The translations under genes were made by a program, and so were the position numbers. A DNA stretch of 64,000 nucleotides from Hemiscyllium ocellatum (taxonomy: Eukaryota), in NCBI RefSeq assembly GCF_020745735.1, contig NC_083409.1:14254760-14318759 (forward strand), read 5' to 3'. This document shows positions 6,351 to 63,873 of the stretch, piece by piece. Position 1 is the stretch's first letter. Each line of letters starts with the position of its first letter. Under the pieces are notes generated by a model. It searched no databases. It saw only the letters and a program-made list of their open reading frames with translations, and was not told the origin of the DNA.

Positions 6351-6377
6351 TAGACAGCCTTCTTCACTGCCAATGAT

Positions 6378-7800: not shown

Positions 7801-8740
7801 ATTCTGAAGTTCCCACCTAAATGCACACTCTCTCCACTCTTTGGTTATCTGTTGATAAACAGCTACAGCAGGGCTCACAGTCCAGTAAGTTCAGTGTTCC
7901 AGGGTTTTGGGAAACTCTCCAGAAGACTTTAAGAAATAGGAGCAGAAATCAGCCATTCAGCCCATTGAATCTGCTCTGCAATTTGATCTTGGCAGATATG
8001 CTTCTCAACCCCATTCTCCTGCCTACTCCACAGGAATTTTCCATCCCCTTAACAATCACAAACCTATCTATCCCTGTCTTAAATACACTCAGTGACTTGG
8101 CCTCCACTGCCCTCTGCAGCAATAAGTTCAACAGATTCACCACCCTCTGGCTGAAGAGATTCACCCTTATCTCAACTCTAAAGAGTCGGCCCTTCATTCT
8201 GAGGCTGTGCCTTGGTTACCGAGTCTCTCCTGTTTTTGGAAACATCTTCTCTGCATCCACTCTATCCAGGCCTGTCAGTATTCTGGAAATTTCAATAAGA
8301 TCCCTCTTCATCCTTCTAAAGTCCATTGAGTACAGACCCAGAGTCCTCAAGCACGCCTGATATGACAAGCCCTTCATTGCCAGGATCATTCTTGTAAACC
8401 CCTCCAATGCCAGTACATTGTTCTATTAAAATATGGGTCCCAAAAATGCCCACAATATTCCAAATACAGTTTGACCAGAGCCTTACACAGCCTCAGCAGT
8501 ACATCTCTGCTCTTGTATTCTGGCCCTATTGAAATGAATGCTATCATTTCATTTGCCTTCTCAAGCACAAACTGGACCTGCCTGTTAACCTGAATGAGGT
8601 TTGTGCTTTAGATTTCCAAAGGCTTTCCTCATTTAGCAAACAGTCTTTGTATTTCTTCTTGTGTTCTATCTGCTACTTCTTTGCCAACTCTCAGAGCCTA
8701 TTAGGACCTTTTACAGCCTTCCCACTTCCTCAACACTACC

Positions 8741-9064
8741 TTTAGATTAGAGATTACTTTAGATTACTTACAGTGTGGAAACAGGCCCTTCGGCCCAACA
8801 AGTCCACACCGACCCACCGAAGCGAAACCCACCCATACCCCTACATTTACCCCTTACCTAACACTACGGGCAATTTACGTGGCCAATTCACCTGACCCGC
8901 ACATCTTTGGACTGTGGGAGGAAACCGGAGCACCCGGAGGAAACCCACGCAGACACGGGGAGAACGTGCAAACTCCTCACAGTCAGTCGCCTGAGTTGGG
9001 AATTGAACCCAGGTCTCTGGCGCTGTGAGGCAGCACTGCTAACCACTGTGCCACCGTGCCGCCC
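8741..9064 (-). mobile_element. HE1/V-SINE-type SINE nested in CR1
   Basis: Full-length, close to the copy at 50110-50456. Confidence 0.93.
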
Positions 9065-9463
9065 CTCCTGTCCCTCCACCTATCTCATGTTGTCTGCAAA
9101 CTTAGCAACAATGTCTTCACTTCCTTCATCCAGATTGTTAATGTATAACGTGAATAGTTATTGTCCCAACATTGACACCTGCAGAACTCTACCAGTCACC
9201 AGCTGCCATCTTTCCTCACTCTCTGCTTTATGCCAACCTGTCCGTTCTCAGTCCATGCCAGTACATTGCCCCTAACACCGTGGGCGCTTATCTTATGTCA
9301 AATACCTTCTGGAAATCAAAATACATTACTTCCTCGGACTCTCCTTTGCCTGACTGGCTCATTGCCTCCTCAAAGAATTCTAACACATTTGCCAGGCATG
9401 ACCTCCCCTTGATGAAACCGTGTTGACTCAGCCCTATTTTACCATTGCACTTCCAAGTCCACC

Positions 9464-9648
9464 GGGTGACACTGTGGCACATTGGTTAGCACTGCTGCCT
9501 CACAGCGCCAGGGACCTGGGTTCAATTCCTGCCTCAGGCGACTGACTGTGTGGAGTTTGCATGTTCTCCCCGTGTCTGTGTGGGTTTCCTCCAGGTGCTC
9601 CGGTTTCCTCCCACAGTCCAAAGATGTGCGGGTCAGGTGAATTGGCCT
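9464..9648 (+). mobile_element. HE1/V-SINE-type SINE, 3'-truncated
   Basis: Head and central domain present, tail absent. Confidence 0.88.
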
Positions 9649-10702
9649 TAGCCTTAGGCAAGGGGTATATATCCCCCATCAAATCTCCACCTCCACACCC
9701 TGACTCCATTGATTCCTGAAAGATCATCACCAATGCCTCCACAATCTCTTCAGTGATCTCCTTCAGAACACACTGGTGTAGTTCATCCAGTCTGGGGGAG
9801 TTATCCAAATTCAGACCTTCCAGCTTCCCCAGTACCTCCTCCTTACTGATGGCCACTACACGCCTGAACTGCCCCCTGACAGTCTGGAAGTACTGGTACA
9901 CTGCTGGTGTTTTCCATGGTGCAGACTGATGCAAAGTATCGATTCAATTCCTCGGCTATTCCTTCATTTCCTACTATTCTTTCTCCAAACTCATTTTCCA
10001 GTGATCCAATGTCTAGTTTTGCCTCCCTCTTCCTTTTTATATATTTGCTAAAACTCTTGCAATCTTCTTTTATATTACTGGCTAGATAACTCCCAGATTT
10101 CATCTTCTCCACCCTTAATGCTTTTTTAGTTATCCTCTATAGCTCTTTAAAGACTTCCTAATCCTCTGGCTTCCCACTATTCTCCACCACATTGGATGCT
10201 TTTTCTTTTGCTTTTATGCTGTCCTTGACCTCCCTCATCAGCCATGGTTGCCTTGTCCTCCCCTGAGAATGTTTTTTTCTTTTTTGGGATGAATTCCTAC
10301 TCTACTTCCTGAATTACCCCCAGAAACTCTGCTGTTTGCTGCCCCACCATCTTACCTGCTCGGCTCCCCTTACAACCAACTCTGGCCAGCTCCTTCCTCA
10401 TGTCTTTGCAGTTACCTTTACTCAACTGAAATACAGTTCCATCTGATTGTAGCTTCTCTCTCTCAAACTACAGGGGGAATTATGGTCACTTATCCAGAGT
10501 GATACTTTCACCTTAAACTCACTAATCATGTTTGCCTCATTCCACATCACTGAATCCAGACCTGCCTGTTCCATCATGGCTCAACCACAAGCTGCTCCAA
10601 AAACCATCTCGTAGACATTCCATGAAATCCTTTTCTTTCGATGCACTACCCAGTCCACCTATCCATTGAGGTCTACCCTGACATTTAGTTTATCCCTTTT
10701 CT

Positions 10703-10997
10703 GGGCGGCATGGTGGCACAGTGGTTAGCACTGCTGCCTCACAGCGCCTGAGACCCAGGTTCAATTCCTATCTCAGGCGACTGACTGCGTGGAGTTTGCT
10801 CATTCTCCCCATGTCTGCGTGGGTTTCCTCCCACAGTCCAAAGATGTGCAAGTCAGGTGAATTGGACATGCTAAATTGCCCGTAGTGTTAGGTAAGGGGT
10901 AAATGTAGGGGTATGGGTGGGTTGCGCTTCAGTGGGTCGGTGTGGACTTGTTGGGCTGAACAGCCTGCTTCCACACTGTAAGTAATCTAATCTAATT
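10703..10997 (+). mobile_element. HE1/V-SINE-type SINE
   Basis: Box A TGGCACAGTGG, box B GGTTCAATTCC, tail taatctaatctaat. Confidence 0.92.
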
Positions 10998-11779
10998 TTC
11001 TGTCTCCTGATTGATTTCCTTCCCCACACCCTGATTACTGCTTGGAGACCTGGACATAACTTGCATCAGATTCTTTATTGTGGTTCCTCAGCTCTACCCA
11101 CACACATTCTACACCTTCTGACTTCTTGCTATTGATTGAATTTTATTTCACACTAACAAGGCAACTCTTGCCCCTCTGCCCATCTGCCTGTCCTTTTGAT
11201 AGGACATGGATCCTTGGATATTTAGTTCCCAGCCCAGACCCCCTTACAGCCATGTCTCTGTGATACCCACAACATCGTACCTGCCAGTTTCAATCTGCAC
11301 TACAAGCTCATTGCGTATACTGTGTGCTTTTAAGTACAACACCCTCAGTCCTGCATTGACTGCCCTCCTTCTCATCATTGTCCCCTTATCTGCTGTGCTT
11401 GAAGTTCGACTCTTGTTCCTTTCTGTACTCTCTGTCCTAGGTTGTCTTCTAGAAACTTGAATAACCTCTCCTGAGCCCTCCTCCACTTTAACTAGTTTAA
11501 TTCCTTGGACACTCAATTTACCTTGATTTATTGCGTCACTTTGTCTACCTTATTCGGAATGCTTTGTGCATTTAGTTACAAACTCTTTAAATTTATTCTA
11601 TTATTGATTTTCCCTGCACTTCTTTAGTTCCTTTGATATTCAAAAAATCCGTCCCCATCTTTTATTTTCTGGTAACAATCAATCCCACCACTAACCAACA
11701 ATCGACCTTCTCCTTCACCTTCTGTTTTCTCATTTTCCATCCAACTGAAACAAATTACTTTATGTGTCGATTGACCTAA

Positions 11780-12095
11780 GGCATGGTGGCTCAGTGGTTA
11801 GCACCGCTACCTCACAGCGCCAAGGATACGGGTTCAATTCCTGCCTTGGGAAACTGTCTGTGTGGTGTTTGCACATTGTCCCTGTGTCTGTGTGGGTTTC
11901 CCCCAGGTGCTCTGGTTTACTCCCACTGTCCAAAGATGTGCAGGCCAGGTGAATTGGCCATTCTAAATTGCCTACAGTGTTAGGTGAAATAGTCAGGTGT
12001 AAATGTAGGGACTGTTTCTGGGTGGGTTGCTGTTCGGAGAGTTGGTGTGGACTTGTCAGGCTGAACTGCCTGTTTCCACACTGGAGGGAATCTAA
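11780..12095 (+). mobile_element. HE1/V-SINE-type SINE (older, diverged)
   Basis: Same domain order with more substitutions. Confidence 0.88.
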
Positions 12096-12309
12096 TCAGG
12101 CCAATATTTCTCATTATTGCTCTTTGATCTCTTGCTTCTACTTGGATCCTGCTGTGTAGAAACTGGCTGCCACCTTCCTGACATTGCAACAGTGACTCCT
12201 TGTCAAACAAAACTGTCTGTAAATGTCTTTGGAAGAGCCTGAAATGTTAAGGGCTGGATTGATGCCCATATGCTCTAAACTTTTCTGATTTACATATCCA
12301 TGCCTTTTA

Positions 12310-13920
12310 AATGTTTTAATCATACCAGCCTTCACCACTTCTTCTGGCAGCCCATTTCATACATTTAACACCATCTGAATGAAAACGTTGTTCTTTAGGT
12401 CCCTTTTAAATCTTTCCCCTGTCACCTTCAACCTATGCCCTCCAGTTCTGGACTCCCCCACTCTGGAGAAAAGATCTTCTCTATTCACCCTATCTATGCT
12501 GCTCATGATTTTATAAACCTCCATCCGGTCACCCATCAACCTGCAATGATCCAGGGAAAACAGCCTCAGCCTATTCAGCCTCTCCCGATAGCTCAAACCC
12601 TCCAACCTTGGCAACATCCTTGTAAATCTTTTCTGAACCATTTTAAGGTTCACAACATTTTTCCTCCAGCAGGGAGACCAGAATTACACACAGTATTCCA
12701 AAAGTGCCCTAACCAATGTCTGTCAGCCACAAGAGCTCCCAACTCCAATACTCAATGCACTGACCAATAAAAGAAAGCAAACCAAATGACATTGTCACCC
12801 CCCCCCCCCCACCCCCCCACCTACCTGCAACCTCACTTCCAGTGAAGTATTCTTTTTTTTTGGATGAACTGAGAGTCTTCCAGTTGTGAAAGATGCCATT
12901 CCATGGACTTTTGGATGAAGAGCAGGCAGTTCCCCCTGGTGTCCCTAATCAATATTTATCCCCCAGTCAAAATCAATGAAAATCTGTTTCTCTTCTTTTT
13001 ATCATATTGTGTTTGGGATCTCGCTGTGCACAGTCTGCAGGAAAGATCCATTGGGACATCTTGATTTGGGGACAGGTGCTTCACAAATGCAAGTCTTTCT
13101 TTAAGTTTGAAGTCTCCTGATCCGAACACTCACCCATTGTCTGTGCACTCTCACCTTCCGGGGGCATGGGGTCATTAGGAGCAGTGACCCAAAGGACACT
13201 GAGACTCTTTGCAGCCTCACCCTTGACCTCAGCCCAGCAGTGTGCAGCAAGGTTTGAAATGTAATCTAGAACCTTCTACACAGACACCCCAATGTGACTC
13301 ATTCCCGAAGTGTGTGGATCCGAGTCTGCTCCAAAGTTCTCGGATAAATTTCTCCTGATCTGTGGGTGATCGGAGGTTTGTTAAAGAAGTATCAAGATCC
13401 GTCCCACTTTCCAGCTCTTGCTCCATAGCTCTGGAGGTTTCACTGTTTGAAGTGAATACCCAAGTGTTTTTTTCAAAGTGATGAGGGTTTCTGCCTCTCC
13501 CACCCTTTCAGGCTGTGAGTCCCACATCCCACCAAGCTCTGGGTGAAAACAAATACCCTCAACTCCCCTATAATCCTGCCCCCAACTGATTTCAATCTCT
13601 CCCCATGGTTATTGCCCTCTGTGCTGGTGGAAATCAGTCCTTCCTACCCACTCTGTCCAGGCCCCTCATCATTTTACACACCACCATCAAATCTCCCCTC
13701 AGCCTCCTGTGTTCCAACAAAAACACTCCCAGCCAATCCAAACATTCCTCAAAACTCAAAGTTCCCATTCCAGACAAACTCTTCCTCTGTCCTGGTCTCC
13801 TGTGGGATCACATCCTTCCTATAATGTGGTGACCAGAACCGTACACTGTTCTCTCACTGTGCTCTAACTGGGGTTTTATACAGTTCCAGAATAAACAAAC
13901 TCCTTGCTTTCACAGTCAAC
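12310..13920 (-). mobile_element. Two CR1 3' fragments (about 12310-12790 and 13460-13920) with other repeat debris between them
   Basis: ORF 12357-12653 MVQKRFTRMLPRLEGLSYRERLNRLRLFSL...FSRVGESRTGGHRLKV. Confidence 0.75.
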
Positions 13921-13934
13921 CAAAAATGAGATAA

Positions 13935-14250
13935 GGGAGGTGATGGTCTAATGGTGTTATTGCTGAGCTGTTAATCCAGAGATCCAGATAATGTTCTGGG
14001 GACCAGGGTTAGAATCCAGCAGATGGTGGCATTCAAATTCAATCAAAAAAAATCTGGAATTAAGTCTAATGACGACCATGAAACCATCTTTGATTGTCAG
14101 GAAAACGCCATCTGATTCCCTAATGTCCTTTCGGGAAAGAAACTGCCATCCTTACCATGTGACCCCAGACCCACAGCAATGTGGTTGACTCTAAACTGCC
14201 CTTTGGGTGATTAGCGATGGACAATAAATGCTGCCGATCCAGCAATTGCC
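13935..14250 (+). mobile_element. Second SINE family (tRNA-like head, tail ending cccagacccacagcaatgtggttgactct...aataaatgctg)
   Basis: Box-A-like tggtctaatgg. The same tail recurs at about 15125-15210, and reversed at about 27120 and 60570. Exact family not determined. Confidence 0.65.
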
Positions 14251-15343
14251 CTCATTCCATCAAGGGAAAATGAAGAACAGTTTATCCCATGTGTCTTCTT
14301 ACCACCTCACTGACCTGCATTAAACACCATGGCCAAATCTTCCATCTCCACATGACTTGCAGTTTCAAATTCCTTCATTATCTGAGATACAGATAGAAAC
14401 ATCCAAACTACGAGCAACCGTAGGCCATTTGGCCCCCGAGCCTGCTCCACCATTCATTATGATCATGGCTGATTATCCAACACAGTCCCCTGTTCCTGCT
14501 TTCTCCCCACGTTCTTTGATCCCTTTCATCCGAAGAACTACATCTAATTCCTTATTGAACACATACCGCATCTAATTCCCTCATGCTGGTAAAATGGATG
14601 AGAATTATTGGGTTGTTGTTTTTTGACCAGTATGGACACAATGGGCTGATGGGCCTTTTGGGTCTCTCTGACTCGATGATTCTATTATTATACTTTAAGA
14701 ATAACTGAGTACCAAGGACTGACCACTGTGTAACTACCTGTCATTCAGAAAAAGACTCATTCTTTCTGTCCTGTCTGCCAACCAGTTCCCAATCCATGTC
14801 AGTATGTGAACCCCAATCCTCTTGTTCATTTGGTCTAGATCTGGAAGCCACACCCTTACTAATTGTGGGACCAGATTCTGAACAGTCTGTCTCATCCTTC
14901 GAGGGCTCCTACTGCCCTGACACTGATTTCCCATCATGCCATTGGTTCCGATCCACTTTTACCAAAGCACCACACAGTTTAGTAAAATGAAAACTTTTAC
15001 ACTTGCTCCATGGTTCTCCATTTCCATCCCTACTCTCAATCTCACTGAGTTCTGATCACTGTCACGAAAATGCTCCCCCATTGACAGCCCTTCCAGCTGC
15101 CCAGAAACTGTCCCTTCTCTCTATGCTACTTCACCATCACCTTCTCAGGGGCAATTAGGGATGGGTAATAAATGTTGGCCCTGCCAGTGACACCCACATC
15201 CCAAGAAGCAATGTGAACAATGCTTGGTCATTTGTTGGGTTTATTCTGTATTGACGACAAATGTTCAAAAAGATTGTATGGCCAGATTATGGTTGAATTC
15301 CCTTCCAGTGGCAGGAATTAAAATTGTTTCTCTTGTCTTTCAG

Positions 15344-15672
15344 GCCGTGAGAACTCTCAGCCCAAGCTGACCTTGCTGCCCCCCTCCCCGGAGCAGGTCA
15401 ATGCCAAGGGCACTGCCACCCTGGTGTGCCTTGCCAATCACTTCTATCCCGATGAGCTGGAGGTGCAGTGGAAGAAGGACGGTGCAGTCATTTCGGACGG
15501 GGTTCAGACCAGCAACTACCTGCGAGCTTCAGACAGCACCTACAGTGTCAGCAGCCTGCTGACCCTCTCTGGGTCTGACTGGGAGTCCGACGCTCGCTTC
15601 TCCTGTGCCCTCACCCACGTGACCCTCCCCTCTCCCCTCAGCAAGAGCATCAGGAGATCAGAATGTGTGTAG
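15344..15672 (+). CDS. IGKC: Ig kappa-type light-chain constant exon
   Basis: Acceptor tcttgtctttcag|. SRENSQPKLTLLPPSPEQVNAKGTATLVCLANHFYPDELEVQWKKDGAVISDGVQTSNYLRASDSTYSVSSLLTLSGSDWESDARFSCALTHVTLPSPLSKSIRRSECV*. C1-set Cys/Trp/Cys and the penultimate interchain Cys are present, in phase with J. Confidence 0.97.
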
Positions 15673-50456: not shown

Positions 50457-51245
50457 ACCTGTAAGCCCCTTGGTTCATCCCGGAGATCGTACTTTTGGAA
50501 GTCTGGAATAAAACATTAACCTCTTCCAGTTTAATTTTAGTCATCCCCTTAATTTACTAATAGCATCACTGTTCCAACATAACACTGACACCTATAAGCC
50601 AGGTTGACTGGATTCTAAAAACCCAGGAGAGTAGGATATCGCTCTTCCTTCAAGAGCCCTGGCAGGTTACTCTGTTGTACTACCACAGACAGGCTACCAT
50701 TATACGAATGTTTACATACGCTGTACTGTCAAGAATAGGCTTTCTTTGGACAAAAAGTTAACAAAAGCACTGCTTGTTCTAAATGAGGCAGATAACAGTG
50801 AAGGACAATAATTTGGGAGAGAAGTTAATTGATACCAAGTTATTAATTTCACAAAGGGTCAGCTGTGAATGTTATCACTTGGTGTCCTCTTCATGCAGAT
50901 TCTCTGATGCTCAGGAAAATGTTCTTAATTGCCTTACCCTCCAGCCTCTCTATTTTCTGGTGGACAGTAAATGTGTTCTATAATTCAACATTACATTTTA
51001 GTCTAAAAGTTTCAGGACAAGTTTTAAGGCTATAGACTTTCTCAAACAAAACTTGAGAGAGCTTGCCCAAGTCTGGTAAGGAGGACCGATTGGCAAACTT
51101 GAATAAAGACAAGAATGAAGAAAACATTAATGGACTGGTGTGTTCAGAGAGAAGGCATCCAAGGCAGCACTGGAGACAGACACCAAAATTAACGCTGATG
51201 TGTCTGTGTGTTCTTCCAGTACACAAAGGGAGGACTTTTCACTAA

Positions 51246-51710
51246 GTATCCACAAGAACTCCAACTCCTCTGTTGGGTTTACTGAACAGGGAAAAGCACC
51301 AACTCGAGACTCAATTTAAAGTACCATTCCTCGAGCCTCAATCTGAGGAATTTCATGAGGAGCACATGGACATTAAAGGAGAGGAACCCAAGGACAATCG
51401 TGAGGATAGTGAAGACTTTAACGGAGATGATCTGAAGAGCAGTGATTCAAAGGCCAATTCTTTGGTTGATATGATACTCTCTTCCTTTGTCAAGGATGCA
51501 ATTGAACAATTGCAAGAAATCACAAAGTCTGTAGCTGAAAAGGTTTGGCTCACTAATCAATGATTCCAGTTCAAATTGGATATTGAATCCTGGCCCAGGT
51601 CACCTTCCAAGGATCTAGAGGAGGAACACAAGACTGATATCCCATTGGACACATTTGAAAGTGATGATGATAAGGAGGAAGTATTATCTTCAGATCTTTG
51701 TCCTCGACCT
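51246..51710 (+). pseudogene. CEP350: CEP350-like exon from the C-terminal region, with a premature stop
   Basis: TPLLGLLNREKHQLETQ...LVDMILSSFVKDAIEQLQEI...KVWLTNQ*...DDDKEEVLSSDLCPRP|gtaagt, resembling recalled vertebrate CEP350 LLDLLTREKNQLEAQ, FVKDTVNQLQQI and EKEEISSPDMCPRP. TGA at 51561-51563. Confidence 0.85.
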
Positions 51711-52691
51711 GTAAGTACCATGTTTTAACATACTTATAGGATTATCATTATTTCCCAGACAATATGTCAAAATACAACTCCACTTTTTTCAGCAACCTGT
51801 TGCAGGTCATCATTTTTAGAAATTATCCTGAGTGTTCCCCTTTCCCAAGGACCCTTTACCAAAAGACTATTGTGAGGAATATCTTGATAAATTGTGAAAT
51901 AAATTTGTGGGTGATAAAATCAAGCAGTGGGGGATATTCTTAAAATTTCTGGTGTCTACTTTGCCAATCAATTCTCGAAGTATGTGTGAGTAGCCTGATT
52001 ATTTCTCAAGGGATTTAGTGACCATTTCCACTGTGTAATTATAGAGTTCAGAACTGAAAGATTGCTATTGAAATTCAAACCCTTTTCCTCCTGCACTTTT
52101 CTGACCTTTGGTTCAAGGAAGGCAGTGTTTTTAAAGAGGATCTTTGAAACTAAGTTTTGAATCATGCTTTTCAATCTCTGGCTTTTTTAGTGCACACACT
52201 GTTTTTCTAGCGTAGTGTTCTGAAGCAAAGTCTAGAGATTGAATGACCATCTGATTAGAAGAACAGAAGTGTTTATGGTTTGCACATATTAACATTCATT
52301 TGGACTAGTAGCATTTTTCATGAAAGTGTTTGACAGGTTCTCATACTGTCCATTTCTTTCTGAGCATTCAGTGTAGGAAATCACAGAAAGAGGAGCTTGG
52401 GTCACTTTGATTTGACACAGCAACATCCTGACTAAACTGACACATGCTCTTCTGATTTGTCAATATTTGTGTTTACCTATAAAATGAATTCCATCATGTG
52501 TCTAAGTCATCAGACATACTCTGAGATATAAAAAGAAGGTTCTCGTTTGTTTGTCTGCTGTTTTTATGCTTTGATTTCAAAGTTTATTAAAACCATGTAT
52601 TGTTCATTAATGTTTTGAAATGAATTTCATCACTTTTGTTCCTGACCTTCAGTTTATAGATTGACCAACAGTTTGTGTACTTTGCAACAAG

Positions 52692-53069
52692 GCGGCCTGA
52701 TGTTTGGCTCACGTGGGCAGGAAGAATTGGCCAAACACCTGGCAGAGTTGGAATTGAGTCGTGAGATGCTCGATGACCTGGTAGATGACCAAGATTGATT
52801 TGATGAGGACTTTGGGCTGCGCTTTAGCAAAGTGCAGCAGCCAGTGCAGGAGGCCCAGTCTACGAAGGATATGCCTCTCAAAATCCAAAGGGAACCTCAT
52901 TTTGCTGTACATCATGATGCTTTAGAGGTTGAGATGATGGTTCATGCAGCGGCTGAGGAAGTTGCAGGATCTTGGCCACGATCCAGGAGATCTACAAATA
53001 CTCCCAGACTATCTTGAGAATAATAAATGGAAAGATGTAGAGAGTGTGAGCAAAAGAGTTTCTTGTGAG
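52692..53069 (+). pseudogene. CEP350: CEP350-like C-terminal exon with a stop and a frameshift
   Basis: FGSRGQEELAKHLAELELSREMLDDLVDDQD*FDEDFGL (TGA at 52796-52798 where Trp is expected), AVHHDALEVEMMVHAAAEE, a frameshift near 52965, then LGHD...ESVSKRV and donor GTGAGA at 53070. Confidence 0.9.
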
Positions 53070-54440
53070 GTGAGATCCAGCTTTTGCATTTGAACACAAA
53101 CTTATTTTTTCTCAGATAAACAAGAAAGCTATGGGTTAATAGTGCTCCACAGCAGCTCTGATTGGTGATATGTATAACAGAGCATGTTAAAAACATTCTG
53201 ATGACTGCATTGAATTCAATTTACCATTTGCCCCTTCTCTAAAAGTCCAAACCACTTTCTCCTCCACTGTTTGTACTCTCCCATTATTAATTTAGCATCA
53301 TCATCATCATCCTGTTATTCATTAAATCCTATCTGTCACAACTTTGCCCACTCTGAGAATCTATATTTTCTGTTTCTATTTACATAATATATGGTGTCTC
53401 TTCCAGTCACTCATTTTTTTTTAATTCTTCTGTATCATCTCTATTTTTCCATTGGTTGATAATATACTATGTAGTTATTAATCATCTTCTTAAAACTCTC
53501 CAGAATCTTATCTTCCACAGGTCACTCCATAATTTTCAGATGAAGAAAGCCTTAAAGGTTGCACTTTTCAGTCTGAATTTGTGCTGTGTTGAGGTTCCCA
53601 AAATTGACCAAAATATTCTAAGATCTTATGCAACTTAATGTGGCTTAAATTGTTTGTGTGCAGTTGGAAGAGCCAGGTTTCTTTTAATGGCCATATCTAT
53701 CACTTTAAATGGCCTGTATGTTTGAATACTTTGTGGCATTTTTCTCTGATCTGATTAGGATCTTACAATTTCAGGTGTAATTCCTTTTCTTATCCACTCA
53801 ATGTATTACTTCATCTCACTCTTAACTTCAGGAACTGAAGTTAAGATGAACTCATCTGTTAAACTGAGAATGATTTGACCTTCCTGAAATGCTGGGTCCG
53901 CTGTATGAATCCACGTCAGCCCCAATGTTTATGGTGAGACTTCCCACAGCGCTGATCTAGAGTTGTCTGCCTACAGTTTATTATAAAGGTGGAACATTTT
54001 TGGAATTTGACTGAGCAGAAGCCTCTTAGAAGATGCTGTTGGCAAAGTGCTGAACCATGTAATGCAATGAATCGTTAGGTGAATAATTAATCATTTCTCA
54101 GTCTCCGTCTGAGGCAAAGTAAAATGTCAAACCTTCTCGCAGTCTGGGAGTGTTGCATATTCCCTTTAAGTTGTTTTGAATATGCTTTTGGATCTCACTG
54201 ATTTTGTTCACTTCAATTATCATTACGTTTTCAAGCATTCCGTAGATTTTTGTTCAATAGAACATGCTTTGAGTTTCATCCAATTTTACATCATTCAGAA
54301 TGGGGGAAAGAGTCCAAAGGCTCAAGTGTCAAAGGCTTCACTGAGCAGTTTTGGGCAAGGGTAATGGATTGTGGGTTGTTTTGTCTGTGTATTTAGGGTG
54401 TGTGCAACAACTGCCATTTCTCCTGGGCTTCTATCCACAG

Positions 54441-54563
54441 ATCTTCATTTCTAATGAGGCTATGAAGTTGTTTGGATTCTACCAAGAGCAATATCAGAAG
54501 ACAGACTGTCAGAAGATGAAGACATTTGACAGGAGAAAACGTGATTGTATGGACCATATTTTG
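54441..54563 (+). pseudogene. CEP350: CEP350-like near-terminal exon, frame open
   Basis: cag|IFISNEAMKLFGFYQEQYQKTDCQKMKTFDRRKRDCMDHIL|gtaagt versus recalled KTDWQKMMKFGRKKRDRVDHIL. Conserved W, G and R residues are replaced. Confidence 0.85.
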
Positions 54564-54876
54564 GTAAGTGCTTCAGTTTAGCAACTGTTCAGTTTTATAT
54601 TGTACCACTGCATCATGATTATGAACACTGCGTCCTACATCTGAATTTTCTATTATTTCAAATGATAAAGGCTTTATCTTCAACTTTGTGGTTGAATTGA
54701 AAACTTGTCCTCACTGCAGTAATTCGCTGAAAATCAAGGCCTACTTTTTCTTAGTTGCCACAAAAGTTTTTTAAAAATTCAGAAGTACTTTGAATTCAGT
54801 GCAGTTGGCAAAGTAGTGTCATGTGTACTTCTTTAAATCCCAATGTTTGATTTCACTTTCTCTCGATGTTTCTTTG

Positions 54877-55015
54877 TCGTATGGTGAATTTGTGAAGAAG
54901 ACCGAAGCTGAACTCAGTAAAGATCTTGATGTTGCCAGCTCAACCTCCACCAAACCGCAGATTAAAACTCTGTACTCCACTGCTTCTGAGAAGCTAAACT
55001 GCTGTCTCTGCAGAA
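54877..55015 (+). pseudogene. CEP350: CEP350-like mid-protein exon remnant, out of order
   Basis: SYGEFVKKTEAELSKDLDVASSTSTKPQIKTLYSTASEK versus recalled SYDEFIKKTEAELSQDLETSPTAKPQIKTLSSASEK. No AG acceptor immediately upstream. Confidence 0.85.
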
Positions 55016-56169
55016 GTACTTTCAGTAATGGATGTTAATTGTGTGACCTTATGAAGGGATGCCTCTTGTATTTCTCTTTTATACCCTAGTGGGACCCCTT
55101 TTGTCCATATTAGTTGGTGATTAAATGTTTCTTGAGTGAAGGAGAGCAGTACTTTTGCAGTGATTTTACAGCAGGGAAATGTGCCTTTTGGCCCAACAGA
55201 CTCGTGCAGTTATTTAGTCTCCATGCGAGTCTACTCCCACTTTGTCTCCTCCCATCACTGCGTCCTTCTGTATGTTTCTCCCAGAGGTACTTATCCAATT
55301 TCCCCTTAAACACATTCATGCTATTCAACTGAAGCATTCCAGGTACTAGCAAGTTTCATGTTGTCACCTTTCTCCGGGAAGAATGTTTTGTTTTGAATGT
55401 CTGATTTGATCCATTAATGTTAACTTCCTGTTCGGGTCAGCTACGCAAGTGAAAACATTTCTCCCTCCATGTAGTTCAAGCACCTTCATTTTTAAAGTTC
55501 TCTATCAAATCTAATTTTCAAAATTCTCTGTCCAATCACTAGCTTATACAGTTGATGGTCGGTTCCTGGGTGTGTTGCTGCACAAAGAGACCTCAGGATG
55601 CAGGTGTATAGTTCCTTGAAAGTGGAGTTGCAGGGAGAGAGTGTGGTGAAGAAGGCATTTGGCATGCTTGCCTTCATCGGTCAGAACATTGCCTGTAGTG
55701 ATTGAAGTGTTACGTTGCAGCTGTACAGGACATTGGTGAGGCCTCGTCTAGAATACTGCATACAGTTCTGATCGCCTTTCTATAGGAAGGATGTTAAACT
55801 TGAGAGGTTGCAGAAAAGATTTACAAGGATGTTGCCGGGGCTGAGTTACAGGGAGAGGCTGAATAGGCTGAAGCATTTTTCCCATCGAGCATTGGAGACT
55901 GAAGCGTGTTTGTAGAGGTTTATACAATGAAGAAAGGGCATGGATAGTGTAAATAGTCAAGATCTTTTTTTTCTCTCATCGTCTGCATAGGGAGTGATTT
56001 GTGATCCTCAAATCCCACCGTCGGTGCCATTGTTTCAGGGTCTTTTTGGACAGCCTCCGCCAGTGCTTCAAGTACAAAGATAAACAGTAGCAGTAACAGA
56101 GGACATCCCTGTCAGCTGCTCATCCCCACATGAAAATTGCTCGATTTAACCCCATTCTTTATATAACAC

Positions 56170-57700
56170 TGCCAATCACCTGGTGAAGGCCCTTCCTAGA
56201 CAAAAACAATCTAGAACAGCAAAGAGATTCGACCATTCTACCTGATCAAAAGCCTTTTCTGCCGCCAGGGAGACCACCAAACCCGGAATCATTCTTTGCT
56301 GACATAGTTGTACTGTGTTCAATACCTGCCTGATGTTGTTGGAGGAGCTGCAGCCCTTGATAAAACCGTCTGCTCCTCTTTTATAATAACAGGCAGCACC
56401 TTCTCCAGGCTCAGAGCTAACACCTTTTGATAGAATTTTAAAATCCATGTTCAACAACGAGATGGGTCGATACAATGTACAATCCTGAGGGTCTTTTCCT
56501 TTCTTTAAAATAAGTGATATTAGCTTCTGTAAGAGAGGGCAGAAGACAGTCCTGGCCATAGGAATGACTAAACAGCTCCAGCAGCGGTTCAGCTGACATG
56601 TGTATGATCTCCTTATAAAATCCACATGGGAATCCATCTGGACCAGATGCCTTACCACTTGGAGCTGCCTTACCACCTCTTGTACATTTAAAAGGGAGGT
56701 CTGATCTGCGTTTATACCAGGGAGGTCCACGTTTTCAAAAAAGGATTCCATTCTCACTTCTCCATCCCCACAGCCCTCTGACCGGTATAACTCTGCATTG
56801 AACTCCCGGAATCTGGCATTGAACTTCCTCAGTTCACAAGTGACCTTGCCAGTTCTCTCCCTGATAAACACAATGGACTGTGGAGTATTTTCCTTCATAG
56901 CCAGGTAAGCCAGGGATCTACCTGGCTTATCCCCATATTTAATCAGCCTTTGCATTGCAAAGGAAACCCCTCTCTTTGCCACTTGTGTGAGCATTGAGTC
57001 CAGAGCAGCCCGGAGAGCCGTGACCCATTGCAGTTTGATCCCGGATGGTCTGGGATAATATGCTGATTTGGCTGCCTTCAGCCAGGCCTCCAGTATCAGC
57101 TGCTGCTGTCCTCTCTGCCTCCTTCTCATTGTCAAGTGTAAAATTGGTGGTCTCCCAGAGAACTGATGGGTTACTGGCTGTAGCCTGATTGAAGACCCAA
57201 AAAACCCTGAACTCCCTTGTGATATACTGTACAAAGTTGTCATCCTTCAACAGAAATGGATTTGTGTCATGTGTCTCCTACACTACCTTTGATCTTAACA
57301 TCTAAATAGACTGCTGCATGGTCTGAAATAGTTATGTTCCCAATCCTGCAGGCTAACACCAAGTCCAAACAAACCGACGGAACAAAGAACATTTCAATTC
57401 TTGTGTGGCACTTGTGCGGGTTGGAGTAAAAGGTAAAGTCCCTCCCATTTGGGTGGGGGCACCTCCACACATCCACTCGCCGCAACTCCTCACACAAGTC
57501 CACTAACTGTCTAGTCTGCAGAGGTGTACCTGACAGCCGCCTTGGCATCCTGTCCACCCCAGGATCCACGAGACAATTAAAGTCTCCTTCTATAAATATA
57601 TGGCATACCCCAGGAGCCATTAATTTAAAGACTGCATCAACTAAAACTTTGAGAGGATGCACCAGGGGGCAGTAAATCGCTAGCCATGACCGCACACTAC
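56170..57700 (-). mobile_element. L1-clade LINE ORF2 remnant (endonuclease to RT N-terminal half)
   Basis: GDFN...DVWR.PHP..RDFTFYS..H...TRI....SDH (APE); ISLILKKGKDP....YRPISLLNMDFKILSK, GFIKG and SLAAEKAFDQVEW (RT). Confidence 0.92.
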
Positions 57701-58174
57701 AGCCCGCAGTCCCCCGAGAGGAAGAAGCTCATTCAATGTGTGACAAGTGAGAAAAAAAAGGCTTCATCAAATCTAAATGATTTGTCCTTCAACTGATCTC
57801 ATGACTTAAATGGGGAATGGTGTCTCTTCAGTTAGGTGATTCAAATCCACCAAATCAATTGTCACGTATGCACTCCTTCCATACCAAAAGGATATGTGGA
57901 TAAAATAGTAGCATGTCTTGCACTGATTTATTTCAAGATTCCTTTATTCAGTCATATGCTGAAGCTAATCAGTCCAACTTTCTTGTGTTCCCCTTGGATC
58001 TGTGGTTGTGCATAAGGAAATTTCCACATGTCCCCTTAAACAATGTGTGAGTCAACATAACAGTTGTGTTGAATCAATAATTGTAACCCAACTCTGCTCC
58101 TTGGGCAGAAAACTAATCCAAGGATTCTAGCTCAGCCTTTAACTTCATGTTCAAGTTCTAAATCTTTCAGTAAG

Positions 58175-58416
58175 CAATGGAAAATAACAAAGAACAATGT
58201 AAATCATTTACTGTCTCTCCAGACTCTGCTTCTCTTGCCACTGAGTACTCCCTTAGGTTCGATGAGGCAATGACTGAAGATGATATTGAAGAGAAATCCT
58301 TCCATCTCCTGCCATCAGAGAGCCATCGCTGCTTTAACATGGGGAAGAAACGCAGCCAGCAGTATGATTCCGATGAGGACATACTGCAGGATCAATCGGC
58401 TTCAATAGCTGTCAAA
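58175..58416 (+). CDS. CEP350: CEP350-like central exon, open frame
   Basis: MENNKEQCKSFTVSPDSASLATEYSLRFDEAMTEDDIEEKSFHLLPSESHRCFNMGKKRSQQYDSDEDILQDQSASIAVK|gtgagt, phase 0. Alternative acceptors at 58170 and 58174. Confidence 0.8.
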
Positions 58417-58789
58417 GTGAGTTCTCCCATGGGTTCGCCAAGGGTGAGTGGTGGAGCCAGTTAGTGGGATCTCAGTGTTTGGGTTAGTTGCTCCTCTCCA
58501 TGTTCTAGGTATCTTGCTATGAGATTCAGATGTAGAGGATGAGGAGCAGATGGGGCAATGAGTGTAAGGCAAGTGTTGGGCAGGGGCTGCTTTTTTTGAA
58601 AAAAGAAATACCACTCACTAACAATGTTGCCAGAGTTTATAAATCTTGAAGAGGAATAAATCTTTTCCATTGTTAATCTTTGTGATTGAGTTACCATGTA
58701 GTGAAGACGGAGATTAATATTTATTGGGATTCCTTGCTCACCTAGTCAGGTAAACAAACTAAATTTGACTGCTAAGAATGTTCCTAAAT

Positions 58790-59740
58790 TTACAACTTTC
58801 TACTGTACATTAAAGGTAGGAGTAGTAAGATGCAAAAGACAAGTGGAGCTTGCAGAGGAATTTGATTTGAACGAGATATTTGTGCAGATAATAAGAGATA
58901 TTCTAATTGGAAGGATATGGTTGGTGATATTCTGCATGGATCTATGTTGGTGCCCTATCTATTCACGATTCATAATGAAAGGAAAGCCACATTCAAAATT
59001 TGGGGCCTCTCTCCAGATTAGCAGCGATCTCGAGTGTCAGTAGATGGAAGCATAAAATCAGAAAGCAATCTTGATAGATTAAGTAAATGAAAAATCTATG
59101 GATGAGTTTGATCGGCAAGTGAGAGTTTGGATCAAAATAGGATATTTCTTGATTGTGGAAATTGAGACACAGTGGAGTTCAAAGGAACTTGGGGGTGATC
59201 CAGCTGTATATAGTTCATGAAAATGTCACAAACAGGCTCAGAAAAGTGATCAAGGGACCAGTGGAATGTTGGCATTTATGTCCAAAGAAGACTCGAAAAC
59301 AAAGGATTAGAAGTCATGCTTCAGCAATTCAAAACCGAGTCCGACCAAGTCGTCAGGGCTGGGCACCATGGCTTAGGAAGAGTATCACTCTTAGTGGAAG
59401 TGCAATGTAGACTAACTGAAGTGATACTTGGGCTCCGAGGCTTAATTTAAGAAGAGAGATTAAATAGATAACATGTTAGAGTCAGAACATTGAGGTGTGA
59501 TATTATGGAACACTTTTACACACAGAAATGGATGAAGTTTGAAACTCCCTTCCACAAACAGTGATTGATTTGAAATCAGTTACAAATTTTAAATCTGAGA
59601 TTGGTAGATTTTTAACCAAAATGCTGAAGGATTATGGGACAAAGACAGGGATTTGTCATGATGTTGAAGATTACCATGATTTGGGTGAATGGTGGAATAG
59701 GCTCAAGACACAAAATAGCCTCCTCCTGTTCTGATGTTGG
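58790..59740 (+). mobile_element. Decayed CR1 3' part
   Basis: Degenerate RT C-terminus and CR1 tail (ggctcaagacacaaaatagcctcctcctgttct). Confidence 0.7.
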
Positions 59741-60129
59741 TGTAACCATGACACCCTTATTCTCTGTATGTATAACTCCTATTCTGTTTTTGGTTATTTA
59801 TCAGAACCTGGCAGCAAATTAGAAATTGGAGTCCTGACCAGAAAATTATCAGTATGAGGGACTTTGCCAGTCTTAATGTGTTTCACAGATGATGAAATGA
59901 GACAGTCAGCATTTACTCATCCTGATAAATATTGGGATAGTTTGATGGGATCACTTGTGATGCAGCACGATTGGCATATTTGATGCTACTCCAACTACTT
60001 TTAATTGTTGTTGTTGTTGTCTGCACTCAGTCCTGAGGTTTTGTGGATTACAGGACAAATTTTGCTTGGGTCAGGGGAAGCAGATCACCTCACTCTGTAC
60101 TGTTTGTCCTCCTGTCTTTCACTGTTCAG

Positions 60130-60317
60130 CATGATTTGAGCATGCCCTTCTCTGGAGGTCAAGACAGTTTCTGTAAATTCACCATGGAGATGGTGCGACA
60201 ATACGTGGAGGAGGAGGAGACGCGTGCACAGCACCAGGTGTCACTCCTCAAACTGAGAGAACAAGCCATGAAGGAAAAGACCAAAGCAGAACTGGCCTGG
60301 TTGGAGCACCAGAAAAA
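60130..60317 (+). CDS. CEP350: CEP350-like central coiled-coil exon, intact
   Basis: ttcag|HDLSMPFSGGQDSFCKFTMEMVRQYVEEEETRAQHQVSLLKLREQAMKEKTKAELAWLEHQK(K)|gtgagt, phase 0 to phase 2. It is closer to recalled CEP350 than to its paralog CCDC187, but needs a tree to confirm. Confidence 0.9.
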
Positions 60318-61849
60318 GTGAGTAGCCGACCTATGCAGTGATGTTCAGCTGAATAGCCTTTCAAAAATGCAATGTAAGAATGTGCAGATCCTTCCAGTAA
60401 TCCTTTCCGGAGAAGGGGGAAAGCTAGTGTCTTTTCTCATTGCAGTCTGGCTGTTGTGCAGAATCTAGGTATTCACGTCATCTTTCCCCTTATCACTGTT
60501 TGGATTGAGTAGAATTAATGCAATTTTGACTCTTTTTTTCATATTTTTAAGTTTGTTCTTTGAATTTGGGATGTTTGCGGTAATGCTGGTATTTATTTAC
60601 TATCCCTCATTCTTGAAATGGTCATGGTGGTGAGCTGCCTTGAGCTACTGCAGTCTGCTTGGTCAATATAAACGTATCAACTCGCAAGTGCTGTTAGGTT
60701 TGGAGTTCAGGGCTCTGGAACAGATTGATGCAAGACTGTTGTCCTAACCCACAGGTCAGGATTTGAAACAAATTATTTCAGTGGATTTCTTTGCTGCTGT
60801 TAAGGCCAAGATTGTTGTCCATCCTTCATTGCACTTGGGAAGGTGATAGTAAGTCATTTCCTCAAACATCTGCAGTTCACCTGCTACAGGTACGACCACA
60901 ATGCTCACAGGAAATGAGTACCTGGGGTTTTGGTCCAAGAGTAGTGAAGGAATGGTATATTGCTAAGTCAGGATGTTGTGTGGCTTGGAGAGAAGCTTAC
61001 AAGTCATGGTGTTACATGTTATATACTCTCTGTGCCCTCTTAGGTGGTAGAGGTCAGAGGCTTTGAAGGTGCTGTTGAAAGAATTGAGTGAGTTCCTGCA
61101 GTGCATCATACAGTGCACATAGCTCTCATTGTTTATTGGTGAATGTGGTGCTGATCAAGCAGGTTGCTATGTTCTATTTGATGTTATGTTTCTTGGGCAT
61201 GTTCTGGGGAGACAGGAAGTGAGTTACTTAGTGAAGAATTTTCAGCTTCTGACCTGGTTTTGTTGACCCAGTATTGTATAGCTGATACGGTTCAGTTTCA
61301 GGTCGAGGGCAACTCTAATGTGATAATTGTGAGGAAAGCAGTGATGATAATACCACTTCACATCAAAAGGATTGCAAGAGATGGTCAATGCTTGGTAGGT
61401 ATGGTGTGCATGCCATCCATGCTGCCATAATACTGTAGTCACATATGCCATACTAGTTGTGGGCAGAAGATTTCCTCCTTCAAAGTCCCTCCATGAATTA
61501 TTTGGGTTTTTATGGCTGCTCAACATCTTTGTGGACACTTTTACTGACACCAACCTTTTATTTCCAGATTTTCTTTTAAAATACCCTTATTGATTTTGTG
61601 AGCATAAACAATATCTTGTTGAAATAAATTTTCTCCTGATTGAATATGACAAGCATGGAGGGGCATTACAGTTATAAAATATTAAGAAGAATTTGCTGTT
61701 TAACAAAATCTTAAACCCTGATCATTCTCTTTCTGGTTTAGTTGCTAATTCAGCAGTGGTGACACTGTGAGATCTACTTGGGCAGATTTATCCAAGTTTG
61801 TCTGTAAATTCCAGCATCATTATACCATGTGTTGCGAGCTGTGGTTTAC

Positions 61850-63760
61850 TAAAGAAGTTGAATCTCTTGTCAAGAGGAAGAAAAGGCTTATTGAGGCGTG
61901 AAGCTCAGTTAGGGAGCTTGAGAGTTACAAGTTAGTGAGGAAAGACCTAAAGAGAGAGCTAAGAAGAGCCAGGAGGAAACATGAAAAATCACTGGCAGAC
62001 AGGATCAAGGAAAACCATACAGCTTTCTATCAGTATATCAGGAAGAAAAGAATGACGAGAGAGATCAGGGCCAGTCAAGGATAGTTGTGGGATGTTGTGC
62101 ATGGAGTCCGAGGAGATGGGGAAGCATTAAATGAATATTTATTTGTTAGTATTCACACCGGAAAAAGATAGTCTGCATCGCAGTATTCTCCTCGACAACA
62201 CTATCAGACTAGACGGGATTGAGGTTCATCAGGAGGTGTTAGCAATTCGATAAAGTGTGAAAATAGGTAAGGCCTCTCGGCTGGATGGGATTAATCCGAG
62301 GATTCTCTGGGAAGCCAGGGAGGAGATTGCAGAACCTTGAGCTTTGATCTTTGTTGTCATTGTCTACAGGAATAGTACCAGAAGACTGGAGGATAACAAA
62401 TGTTGTCCCCTTGTTCAAGAAGGCGAGTAAAAACAACTCTGCTATTATAAATGACTGAGCCTTATTTGGTTGTGGGTAAAATGTTGGAAAAGGTTATAAG
62501 AGATAGGATTTATAATCATCTAGAAAGGAATAAGTTGCTAAGCGATGGTCAACACAGTTCTGTGAAAGTTAGTTCGTGTCTTACAAATTTTATTGAGTTC
62601 TTTTAGGAACATGGATGAGGGTAATGCGGTTGATGTGGTGTACGTGGATTTCAGTAAGGCATTTGATAAATTTCCCACTGTAGGCTATTGCACAAAATAC
62701 AGAGGCATGGGATTGCGGGTGATTTAACTGTTTTGGATCAGAAATTGGCGAGCTGAAAGAAGACAGAGTGTGGTAACTGATGGGAAATGTTCAGTAATGA
62801 GTAATATACCGCAAGGATCTGTTTTGGGTCCACTGCTGTTTGTCATTTTAATAAATGACCCAGATGAGGGCATTGATGGATGGGTTAGTAAATTTGTAGA
62901 TGGCATGAAGGTCAATGGAGTTGTGTATAGTGCTGAAGGGTGTTGCTAGGTTTCAGAGGGATATAGATAAGCTGCAGAGCTGGGTTGAGAGGTGGCAAAA
63001 ATGGAGTTTAATGCAGAAAAGTGTGAGGCGATACAGCCAAGAAGGAGCAACAGGAATAAGGAGTACTTGGTAAGATTCTTGGTAGTGGAGATGTGCAGAG
63101 AAATCTCGATGTCCATGTATAGATCCCTGAAAGTTGCCACCCAGGTTGATAGGAAGGCAATACCATACGGTGAGTTAGCTTTTATTGGTAGAGGAATTGA
63201 GTTTCAGAAGCACATAGTCATGCTGCAGCTGTACAAAACTCTGGTGCGGCCAAACTTGGAGTATTGCGGCAGTTCTGGTCACTGCATTAGAGAAAGGATG
63301 CGGAAGCTTTGGAAAGGGTGCAGATGTTACCTGGTATGGAGGGAAGGTCTGATGAGGAAAGGCTGAGGGACTTATGGCTGTTTTGATTAGAGAGAAGAAA
63401 GTTGAGAGGTGATTTAATTGAGACATATAAGATAATCAGAGGGTTAGATAGGGTGGACAGAAAGCCTTTTTCCACATGAGGTGATGGCTAGCACGAGGGG
63501 ACATAGCTTTAAATTGCAGGGGGATAGATATAGGACAGATGGCAGAGGTAATTTCTTTAGTCAGAGTGGTAAGGGTGTGGAACACACTGCCTGGACTCAT
63601 CAACTTTAAGGGCATTTGAATGGTCATTGGATAAACATACAGATGAAAATGGAATAATGTAGGCTAGATAGGCTTCAGATTGGTTCTACAGGGGGTCGGT
63701 GCAACATGGAGGGCCGAAGAGCCTGCACTGTGCTGTAATATTGTATGTTCTATGTTCATG
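61850..63760 (+). mobile_element. CR1 LINE ORF2 remnant (linker, RT, 3' tail)
   Basis: Degenerate NYR and DFSKAFDK motifs; MEFNAEKCE...LQLYKTLVRPNLEYC. Confidence 0.9.
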
Positions 63761-63785
63761 TGACTTTGCCATGTTCTCTAACCAG

Positions 63786-63873
63786 ACACCTTCGAGACAA
63801 TGGGGAAGATGACAAGATGCCATCCATCCGAAGGAGACAACGTGGGCTTCTGCTCAGGCTGCAGCAGGAGCAG
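63786..63873 (+). CDS. CEP350: CEP350-like central exon, intact
   Basis: accag|A CAC CTT CGA..., giving (K)HLRDNGEDDKMPSIRRRQRGLLLRLQQEQ|gtatga. It completes the phase-2 codon of the previous exon. Confidence 0.9.

What the first reader, a model, noticed from the sequence alone, without database searches (positions are those of the whole stretch)
51246..63873. CEP350 exons in scrambled order beside an Ig kappa cluster
Seen: seven intron-flanked CEP350-like exons on one strand. By recalled CEP350 order they run C-terminal, C-terminal, near-terminal, then a mid-protein exon, then three earlier central exons. No N-terminal or CAP-Gly exons are visible between the CpG island and these exons. Established: CEP350 is normally a single, colinear centrosomal gene. 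Inference: a mosaic of partial genomic duplications, possibly amplified with the light-chain clusters, forming a rearranged paralog or pseudogene family.
Basis: partly seen in the sequence, partly recalled or inferred. Interest (0 to 1): 0.7.

Follow-up and report, generated by a model that had tools for sequence, protein, structure and literature searches.

The report
Scrambled dead CEP350 fragments, shark
Beside a shark antibody light-chain gene lie seven intron-flanked pieces of the centrosome gene CEP350 in the wrong order and partly broken: a decayed, rearranged partial copy from a many-copy family in bamboo/epaulette sharks, not the working gene.

Summary
tblastn with true shark CEP350 proteins finds seven + strand exons. 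In Hemiscyllium residues they run 2794-3013, 3014-3145, 3195-3235, then 2144-2182, then 1594-1659, 1660-1721, 1722-1751. No N-terminal or CAP-Gly exon is in the window. The three tail exons are dead: three frameshifts and two in-frame TGA. One tail exon and the last exon are missing. The lone exon has lost both splice sites. The three middle exons are open but have changed 15 of 129 positions that never vary in 14 cartilaginous-fish CEP350s.

A tree puts the tail copy as sister to the true CEP350 of Hemiscyllium plus Chiloscyllium, on a branch about five times longer. 'CEP350-like' models of C. plagiosum share derived changes with this copy.

Contigs from two studies of one species and from two other species cover the tail-to-lone-exon spacer. 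Some join the lone exon to the middle block without a 2.6 kb LINE-bearing stretch. A misassembly is therefore unlikely.

Best reading: a non-functional, unprocessed, rearranged CEP350 fragment mosaic, a passenger of light-chain cluster amplification. The scan has noted such CEP350 copies about 50 times in this genome, and twice in this same order. It is an ordinary kind of thing, and interest is low to moderate.

The parts
51058..51710 (+). Tail exon A, equals aa 2794-3013 of Hemiscyllium CEP350. Frame changes near 51131 and 51255; in-frame TGA at 51561-51563; 3-codon deletion.
52692..53069 (+). Tail exon B, equals aa 3014-3145. TGA at 52796-52798 where all orthologues have W; frame change near 52960. 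AG and GT borders intact.
   Evidence: all other contigs laid read TGG at 52798
53070..54440 (+). Former intron(s) between exons B and D. The exon for aa 3146-3194 that should lie here is absent.
   Evidence: Best local alignment scores 30-33, which is noise
54441..54563 (+). Tail exon D, equals aa 3195-3235, 80% identical. A conserved W is replaced by C. Borders intact.
54564..54876 (+). 313-bp spacer that must hold the first breakpoint. It joins the intron after exon D to the intron before exon L.
   Evidence: covered by contigs in all four runs laid
54877..54993 (+). Lone exon L, equals aa 2144-2182, 87% identical. No AG upstream and no GT downstream.
55201..57761 (-). LINE-bearing stretch: reverse-transcriptase ORFs at 56176-57695 on the - strand and a very high-copy part at 55555-55948. 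It is skipped in contigs of two other species, so it is younger than the L-M1 adjacency.
   Evidence: joint 55200->57762; RVT_1
58223..58416 (+). Middle exon M1, equals aa 1594-1659. Open frame, one codon deleted. R1631C and E1635G are shared with C. plagiosum CEP350-like copies.
60130..60317 (+). Middle exon M2, equals aa 1660-1721. Open frame. Six changes in a stretch that is identical from chimaera to sharks.
63786..63873 (+). Middle exon M3, equals aa 1722-1751. Open frame. The copy probably continues beyond the end of the window.
2532..15669 (+). Cluster-type Ig light-chain gene, same strand. V exon with 12-spacer RSS (about 2650-2990), J with 23-spacer RSS (3418-3496), C exon (15340-15669).

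Best explanation
This is a non-functional, unprocessed (intron-retaining) and rearranged partial copy of CEP350. It belongs to a multi-copy family that began with a genomic duplication of part of CEP350 in the common ancestor of bamboo and epaulette sharks (Hemiscylliidae). The family was then multiplied in the region that holds the cluster-type Ig light-chain genes. The window shows three blocks, all in the direct orientation but in reversed block order: a 3' tail (three exons), a short segment with one later-middle exon, and an earlier-middle block (three exons, probably continuing past the window end).

Shown here: the exon identities and their order, the disabling lesions in the tail, the loss of both splice sites of the lone exon, relaxed constraint in all three blocks, the tree position, the many variants in reads, and the presence of the junction regions in other individuals and species.

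Inferred: the order arose as a head-to-tail duplication junction (end of one partial copy, start of the next). The roughly 0.5-1 kb piece with the lone exon would have been captured at that junction by replication template switching or a comparable complex repair event, before the family was amplified. A LINE later inserted between the lone exon and the middle block. The fragments travel as passengers of Ig cluster amplification and make no CEP350 protein.
For: Order and identity of the exons.

Decay in the tail: two frame changes in exon A, one in exon B, and TGA at 51561 and 52796. Exon C and the last exon are absent. Exon L has no AG or GT.

Relaxed constraint: the middle block is 87% identical to the Hemiscyllium true gene, while true genes are 98% (Rhincodon) and 91% (chimaera) identical to each other over the same columns. 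The tail is 78% against 84%. 15 of 129 and 29 of 138 columns that are invariant across chondrichthyans have changed.

Age: the tail copy is sister to Hemiscyllium plus C. punctatum CEP350 (support 100/99). The two true genes group together without it (96/88). Its branch is 0.23 against about 0.045.

Family: C. plagiosum 'CEP350-like' models P0303-P0305 share R1631C and E1635G, and in part R1621H, K1686E and E1614D.

Reads: the runs laid cover every bin of 52.6-58.5 kb except two LINE-internal bins (56934-57130 and 57525-57721) in the organism C run. They come from two studies of organism A, plus organisms B and C. Up to 8-17 distinct contigs lie at one place in A and B. Contigs in B and C join 55200 to 57762.

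No paper links CEP350 to shark Ig loci. Scan notes describe the same order at two other loci and about 50 CEP350 copies in this genome; these are leads only.
Against: The three middle exons have no stop or frameshift and keep good splice sites, so a transcribed and spliced product that includes them is not excluded. The breakpoints could not be placed to the base, and no microhomology could be tested, because no DNA of the parent gene's introns was obtainable. No single contig was shown to bridge the whole 313-bp spacer; the support is tiling coverage by short contigs. The joint at 55200/57762 is flagged 'between: not known'. The parent gene was not located in this very genome. Copy number cannot be read from contig depth.
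Confidence: 0.78

Rival explanations
1. The reversed block order arose stepwise, by two or more large deletions or unequal crossovers between neighbouring colinear 'mini-CEP350' units in a tandem array, not by one complex junction with a captured segment. The object is the same (a dead mosaic); only the route differs.
For: Scan notes report colinear shortened copies and tandem arrays of 3' exons elsewhere in this genome. Arrays of similar units favour non-allelic recombination. The window also lost exon C and the last exon, so deletions did occur.
Against: It needs two independent breaks that each fall within a few hundred bases of an exon and keep orientation. Before the LINE insertion the lone exon lay only 313 bp from exon D and about 670 bp from exon M1. 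That compactness fits a short captured segment better. No repeat homology was found between the spacers.
Confidence: 0.3
2. The order is an assembly artefact: a false join between similar units of a repetitive array.
For: The region is multi-copy. The best DNA holder has only 0.56 of the sampled words of 54300-55100. No single contig was shown across the whole spacer.
Against: Contigs from a second study of the same species and from two other species cover all bins across 54.4-55.2 kb. None of the loose ends shown lies there, but 1,901 more were not shown. Contigs in two other species link 55200 to 57762. Two other loci of the genome are noted with the same order (untested here).
Confidence: 0.04
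3. The middle block, alone or together with exons beyond the window, is part of a working, shortened CEP350-derived gene, and only the tail upstream is dead.
For: M1-M3 are open and have canonical splice sites. NCBI models exist for related C. plagiosum copies. Earlier follow-ups in this scan found frames of 'mini-CEP350' copies better kept than expected (untested here).
Against: 15 of 129 columns invariant across chondrichthyans have changed. At the tail's lesion density about two lesions would be expected in 471 nt, so seeing none has a probability of about 0.13; this is my estimate. The C. plagiosum model P0304 ends in a decayed M3. No holder is on record as RNA; two runs that are only guessed to be RNA hold 0.22-0.28 of the words.
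Confidence: 0.08
4. It is simply the normal colinear CEP350 gene, and the reader's recalled exon order was wrong.
For: None after testing.
Against: Eleven CEP350 orthologues give the same non-colinear mapping. Stops and frameshifts are present.
Confidence: 0.01

Closest known systems
Unprocessed (duplicated) pseudogenes and gene fragments carried in segmental duplications, such as the non-Ig gene fragments scattered through mammalian Ig loci (from general knowledge, not tested here)
   Same: Introns are retained. Only part of the parent gene was copied. The copy was carried along with neighbouring amplified DNA. Constraint is relaxed and disabling mutations have accumulated.
   Different: The parent here is CEP350 and the host array is the cluster-type light-chain region of a shark. 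The exon blocks are in reversed order, which a plain partial duplicate does not show.
Complex rearrangements by replication template switching (FoSTeS/MMBIR; Lee, Carvalho and Lupski 2007; Hastings et al. 2009; cited from memory)
   Same: Several segments of one gene region are joined in the direct orientation but out of order. A short segment from between the two main blocks sits at the junction.
   Different: No breakpoint sequence or microhomology could be examined. The event is tens of millions of years old and has been overprinted by decay and a LINE insertion.
True CEP350 of Hemiscyllium ocellatum and Chiloscyllium punctatum (P0189, P0188)
   Same: 78-87% protein identity over the seven exons, the same exon borders where testable, and the closest relatives in the tree.
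   Different: The true genes encode about 3,290 colinear residues with a CAP-Gly domain and are nearly invariant in the middle block. The window copy has about 580 residues' worth of exons, in scrambled order and partly broken.

Membership tests
Functional CEP350 orthologue | Colinear exon order covering the whole protein, including the N-terminus and the CAP-Gly domain | tested here: not met
   Only aa 1594-1751, 2144-2182, 2794-3145 and 3195-3235 are present, and out of order.
Functional CEP350 orthologue | Uninterrupted reading frame | tested here: not met
   Three frame changes and two in-frame TGA in exons A and B.
Functional CEP350 orthologue | Purifying selection typical of the family | tested here: not met
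   15 of 129 (middle) and 29 of 138 (tail) invariant columns have changed. The tail branch is about five times that of the true genes.
Unprocessed pseudogene or segmental-duplication fragment | Introns and splice-site borders of the parent gene retained | tested here: met
   AG/GT borders flank six of the seven exons, with 1-3.5 kb spacers.
Unprocessed pseudogene or segmental-duplication fragment | An intact parent gene exists elsewhere | tested here: inconclusive
   Full-length CEP350 is annotated in Hemiscyllium ocellatum and C. punctatum. The parent was not located in the window's own genome.
Unprocessed pseudogene or segmental-duplication fragment | More than one copy in the genome | tested here: met
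   Up to 8-17 distinct contig variants lie at one place in runs of organisms A and B. C. plagiosum has at least two loci with related models.
Processed pseudogene (retrocopy) | Intronless, colinear cDNA copy with a poly(A) tail | tested here: not met
   Introns are present and the order is not colinear.
Template-switch (FoSTeS/MMBIR-type) complex rearrangement | Several nearby segments joined out of order in the direct orientation | tested here: met
   The order is tail, then L, then middle, all on the + strand.
Template-switch (FoSTeS/MMBIR-type) complex rearrangement | Microhomology or short templated insertions at sequenced breakpoints | not testable with these tools
   It needs the parent gene's intron DNA, and no DNA was served for the related assemblies.
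Cartilaginous-fish cluster-type Ig light chain, kappa-like | V, J and C close together on one strand; V with a 12-spacer RSS and J with a 23-spacer RSS; V-set and C1-set domains | tested here: met
   RSS spacers were counted. V-set E 1.8e-16 and C1-set E 1.3e-22. The isotype was not checked against named shark light chains.

The most novel reading that the evidence does not exclude
The tail / lone-exon / middle-block order is a fixed, conserved part of the repeat unit that built the hemiscylliid light-chain array, not a local accident. Its junction would then record the founding template-switch event of the whole amplification. Some copies of the middle block, spliced to exons beyond this window, might still give a shortened CEP350-derived protein or transcript used in lymphoid tissue.
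Probability: 0.12. Interest if true: 0.55.

Novelty: new member of a known kind. Interest (0 to 1): 0.3.

Why it matters
For annotation, these exons should not be merged into a CEP350 gene model, and they will mislead homology-based predictors. For shark immunogenetics, the fragments are convenient markers. Because the copies share derived changes and junctions, a tree of them could date and order the amplification of the light-chain clusters in bamboo and epaulette sharks. The scrambled junction, if shared by all units, would mark the founding event. This window alone shows no new biology beyond a decaying passenger sequence.

Tried and rejected
1. The exact look-up of the 95-aa ORF over exon M1 was not on record.

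2. A word-index search with the middle third of Hemiscyllium CEP350 found no hemiscylliid shortened copies. It returned only fragments from other vertebrates and a 672-aa 'CEP350-like' protein of Pristiophorus.

3. DNA around the C. plagiosum CEP350-like models could not be fetched because the file is too large. Other loci could therefore not be aligned to this one.

4. The short proteins from the first profile search (P0002-P0018) are exon read-throughs from other vertebrates, not shark paralogues, and were dropped.

5. A search for the missing exon C and the last exon anywhere in the window, on both strands, found only noise.

6. A search for CEP350 homology upstream of exon A found none.

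7. A window self-comparison showed only interspersed repeats and no second CEP350 block. A sensitive comparison of the spacers with each other found nothing.

8. The search for RNA runs found no holder on record as RNA.

9. Contig depth cannot give a copy number.

10. The findings look-up cannot reach beyond the window's coordinates.
Full report
**Host and surroundings**

The window is vertebrate DNA, about 45% G+C, CpG-depleted and without N runs. At its left end lies a cluster-type immunoglobulin light-chain gene on the + strand.
- The V exon ends in the usual YYC motif and is followed by a heptamer, a 12-base spacer and a nonamer at 2964.
- A J segment at 3470-3496 is preceded by a nonamer, a 23-base spacer and a heptamer.
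- A C exon lies at 15340-15669.
- Pfam gives V-set (E 1.8e-16) and C1-set (E 1.3e-22).

V and J only 0.5 kb apart is the cartilaginous-fish arrangement. The 35 kb between this gene and the finding is filled with SINE and LINE copies and a decayed LTR-type retroelement. That element has an integrase core at 47024-47320 on the - strand.

**Checking the observation**

A profile search with the exon at 60130-60315 returned CEP350 of many vertebrates. The best was the 3,248-residue protein of the ray Narcine bancroftii (named). tblastn of that protein against the window gave hits only on the + strand between 51 and 64 kb, and not in protein order.

A further search gave the true CEP350 of eleven cartilaginous fishes, among them Hemiscyllium ocellatum (P0189) and Chiloscyllium punctatum (P0188). 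All give the same map. In Hemiscyllium numbering, with exon limits:

| Exon | Window coordinates | CEP350 residues |
|---|---|---|
| A | 51058-51710 | 2794-3013 |
| B | 52692-53069 | 3014-3145 |
| D | 54441-54563 | 3195-3235 |
| L | 54877-54993 | 2144-2182 |
| M1 | 58223-58416 | 1594-1659 |
| M2 | 60130-60317 | 1660-1721 |
| M3 | 63786-63873 | 1722-1751 |

E-values run from 8e-71 to 2e-9. Nothing else in the window matches CEP350 on either strand. The seven exons, their scrambled order and the lack of N-terminal and CAP-Gly exons are all confirmed.

**State of the exons**

The tail is broken.
- Exon A changes frame near 51131 and back near 51255. It has TGA at 51561-51563 where Hemiscyllium has glycine, and it lacks three codons.
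- Exon B has TGA at 52796-52798 where every orthologue has tryptophan, and it changes frame near 52960.
- The well-conserved exon for residues 3146-3194 is not between B and D. The last exon (3236-3288) is nowhere in the window.
- Exon L has no AG in front and CT instead of GT behind.

Exons M1 to M3 are open, apart from one lost codon, and keep canonical borders.

**How it evolves**

Over the 157 residues of the middle block, the true genes of Hemiscyllium and Rhincodon are 98% identical, and Hemiscyllium and the chimaera 91%. The window copy is only 87% identical to Hemiscyllium. Of 129 columns that never vary in 14 cartilaginous-fish CEP350s, 15 have changed here. In the tail, 29 of 138 such columns have changed.

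The middle block's lack of stops is not remarkable. At the tail's density of lesions, about two would be expected in 471 bases. Seeing none has a chance of about 0.13. This is my estimate.

**Age and family**

A maximum-likelihood tree of the 381 tail columns places the window copy as sister to the true genes of Hemiscyllium plus C. punctatum (support 100/99). It sits inside the carpet sharks, after Rhincodon and Stegostoma. The two true genes group together without it (96/88). Its branch is 0.23 changes per site, against about 0.045 for the true genes. The duplication therefore dates to the stem of the bamboo/epaulette sharks. The long branch makes the exact node less certain.

A word-index search with the ORF over M1 found three NCBI models named 'centrosome-associated protein 350-like' in Chiloscyllium plagiosum. 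They share with the window copy changes at otherwise invariant positions. R1631C and E1635G occur in all three. R1621H, K1686E or E1614D occur in some. The copies thus descend from one diverged ancestor copy. Like the true hemiscylliid genes, they carry Q at a site where other sharks have R, which agrees with the tree.

**Is the order real?**

Runs of four coded organisms hold parts of 54300-55100. I laid Logan contigs on 52600-58500 at 85% likeness or more. The runs were two of organism A from different studies, one of organism B and one of organism C.
- All four cover every bin across exon D, the 313-bp spacer and exon L.
- None of the loose ends shown lies there; all shown ones sit in the very high-copy repeat at 55.6-55.9 kb. 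A further 1,901 were not shown.
- Contigs in organisms B and C join 55200 to 57762. They skip the 2,561 bases that hold the reverse-transcriptase ORFs on the - strand (RVT_1).

Before that insertion, exon L lay about 670 bp from exon M1 and 313 bp from exon D.

The contigs are short. No single listed contig bridges the whole spacer, and the joint is marked 'between: not known', so the support is good but not final. Up to 8-17 different contigs lie at one place in organisms A and B and fewer in C, which shows many variant copies. All other contigs read TGG at 52798, so that stop is private to this copy or rare.

**Leads from the scan**

These are AI notes that I did not test.
- About 50 notes on CEP350 exist in this genome, spread from 5.2 Mb before to 4.9 Mb beyond the window and on other pieces.
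- Most describe shortened copies beside light-chain genes.
- Two describe the same order as here: s1-223397, 445 kb downstream, and s1-207239, 5.19 Mb upstream.
- One describes a copy of the last exon between two Ig C exons (s1-195749), which may be where the missing last exon went in such units.

**Mechanism**

Shown: three blocks of one gene, all in the direct orientation, in reversed block order, with compact spacers. They are old enough to be present in three species and were later hit by a LINE.

Inferred: the simplest route is a head-to-tail junction between two partial copies (end of tail, start of middle block). A short piece from between them in the parent gene, carrying exon L, would have been captured at the junction, as in replication template-switch rearrangements. 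The main rival route is two separate deletions or unequal crossovers within an array of colinear shortened copies. I could not decide between the two, because no intron DNA of the parent gene or of other copies was obtainable. The spacers share no homology with each other.

**Function**

None is indicated here. The tail cannot be translated, and exon L cannot be spliced at its old borders. The middle block shows relaxed constraint. No run on record as RNA holds exon M2, although two runs of uncertain kind hold a quarter of its words. I put about 8% on the middle block being part of a working, shortened gene.

**Comparison and novelty**

This is an unprocessed, rearranged pseudogene fragment carried in a segmental amplification, which is a known kind of object. 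I found no paper that links CEP350 to shark Ig loci, so the family itself appears undescribed. This window adds one decayed member and evidence that its odd order is old and shared. Interest is low to moderate. The fragments' main use would be as markers for reconstructing how the light-chain clusters multiplied.

Noticed in passing
window 2532-15669 (+): Complete cluster-type Ig light-chain gene. V and J are only about 0.5 kb apart and unrearranged. The J-C intron is about 12 kb and is packed with SINE and LINE copies (repeats at 4.6-12.8 kb).
   Followed up: partly
window 52796-52798: The TGA that breaks exon B reads TGG in every other contig laid from three runs, so this stop is private to this copy or rare in the family.
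   Followed up: partly
window 55201-57761: A LINE-bearing 2.56 kb stretch is skipped in contigs of organisms B and C. It is an insertion younger than the CEP350 rearrangement. The part at 55555-55948 has summed contig depth of 10^5 and is one of the commonest repeats of these genomes.
   Followed up: partly
window 44000-49760 (-): Decayed LTR-type retroelement. Integrase core (rve, E 6.5e-8) at 47024-47320, integrase zinc-binding domain at 47369-47605, and a weak RNase H match at 48269-48640. Several long open stretches have no Pfam match. It was described only.
   Followed up: partly
P0040 (Pristiophorus japonicus, 672 aa): A 'CEP350-like' protein of a sawshark covers the same middle region at only 42% identity to true CEP350. 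It may be an independent, much older or faster-evolving partial CEP350 duplicate outside the carpet sharks.
   Followed up: no
scan note s1-203521, 533 kb beyond the window: A note reports Ig kappa segments interleaved with broken copies of CEP350 and RNase L. From memory, CEP350 and RNASEL lie in the same chromosomal neighbourhood in human. If so, the amplified shark region may have started next to the true CEP350 locus. No RNase L search was run on this window.
   Followed up: no
window 38069-39000 vs 24453-25395; 35444-35836 vs 23666-24050: Pairs of 0.4-0.9 kb repeats at 86% identity, in direct and inverted orientation, inside the stretch between the Ig gene and the CEP350 fragments. They are probably copies of one transposable element family.
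   Followed up: no
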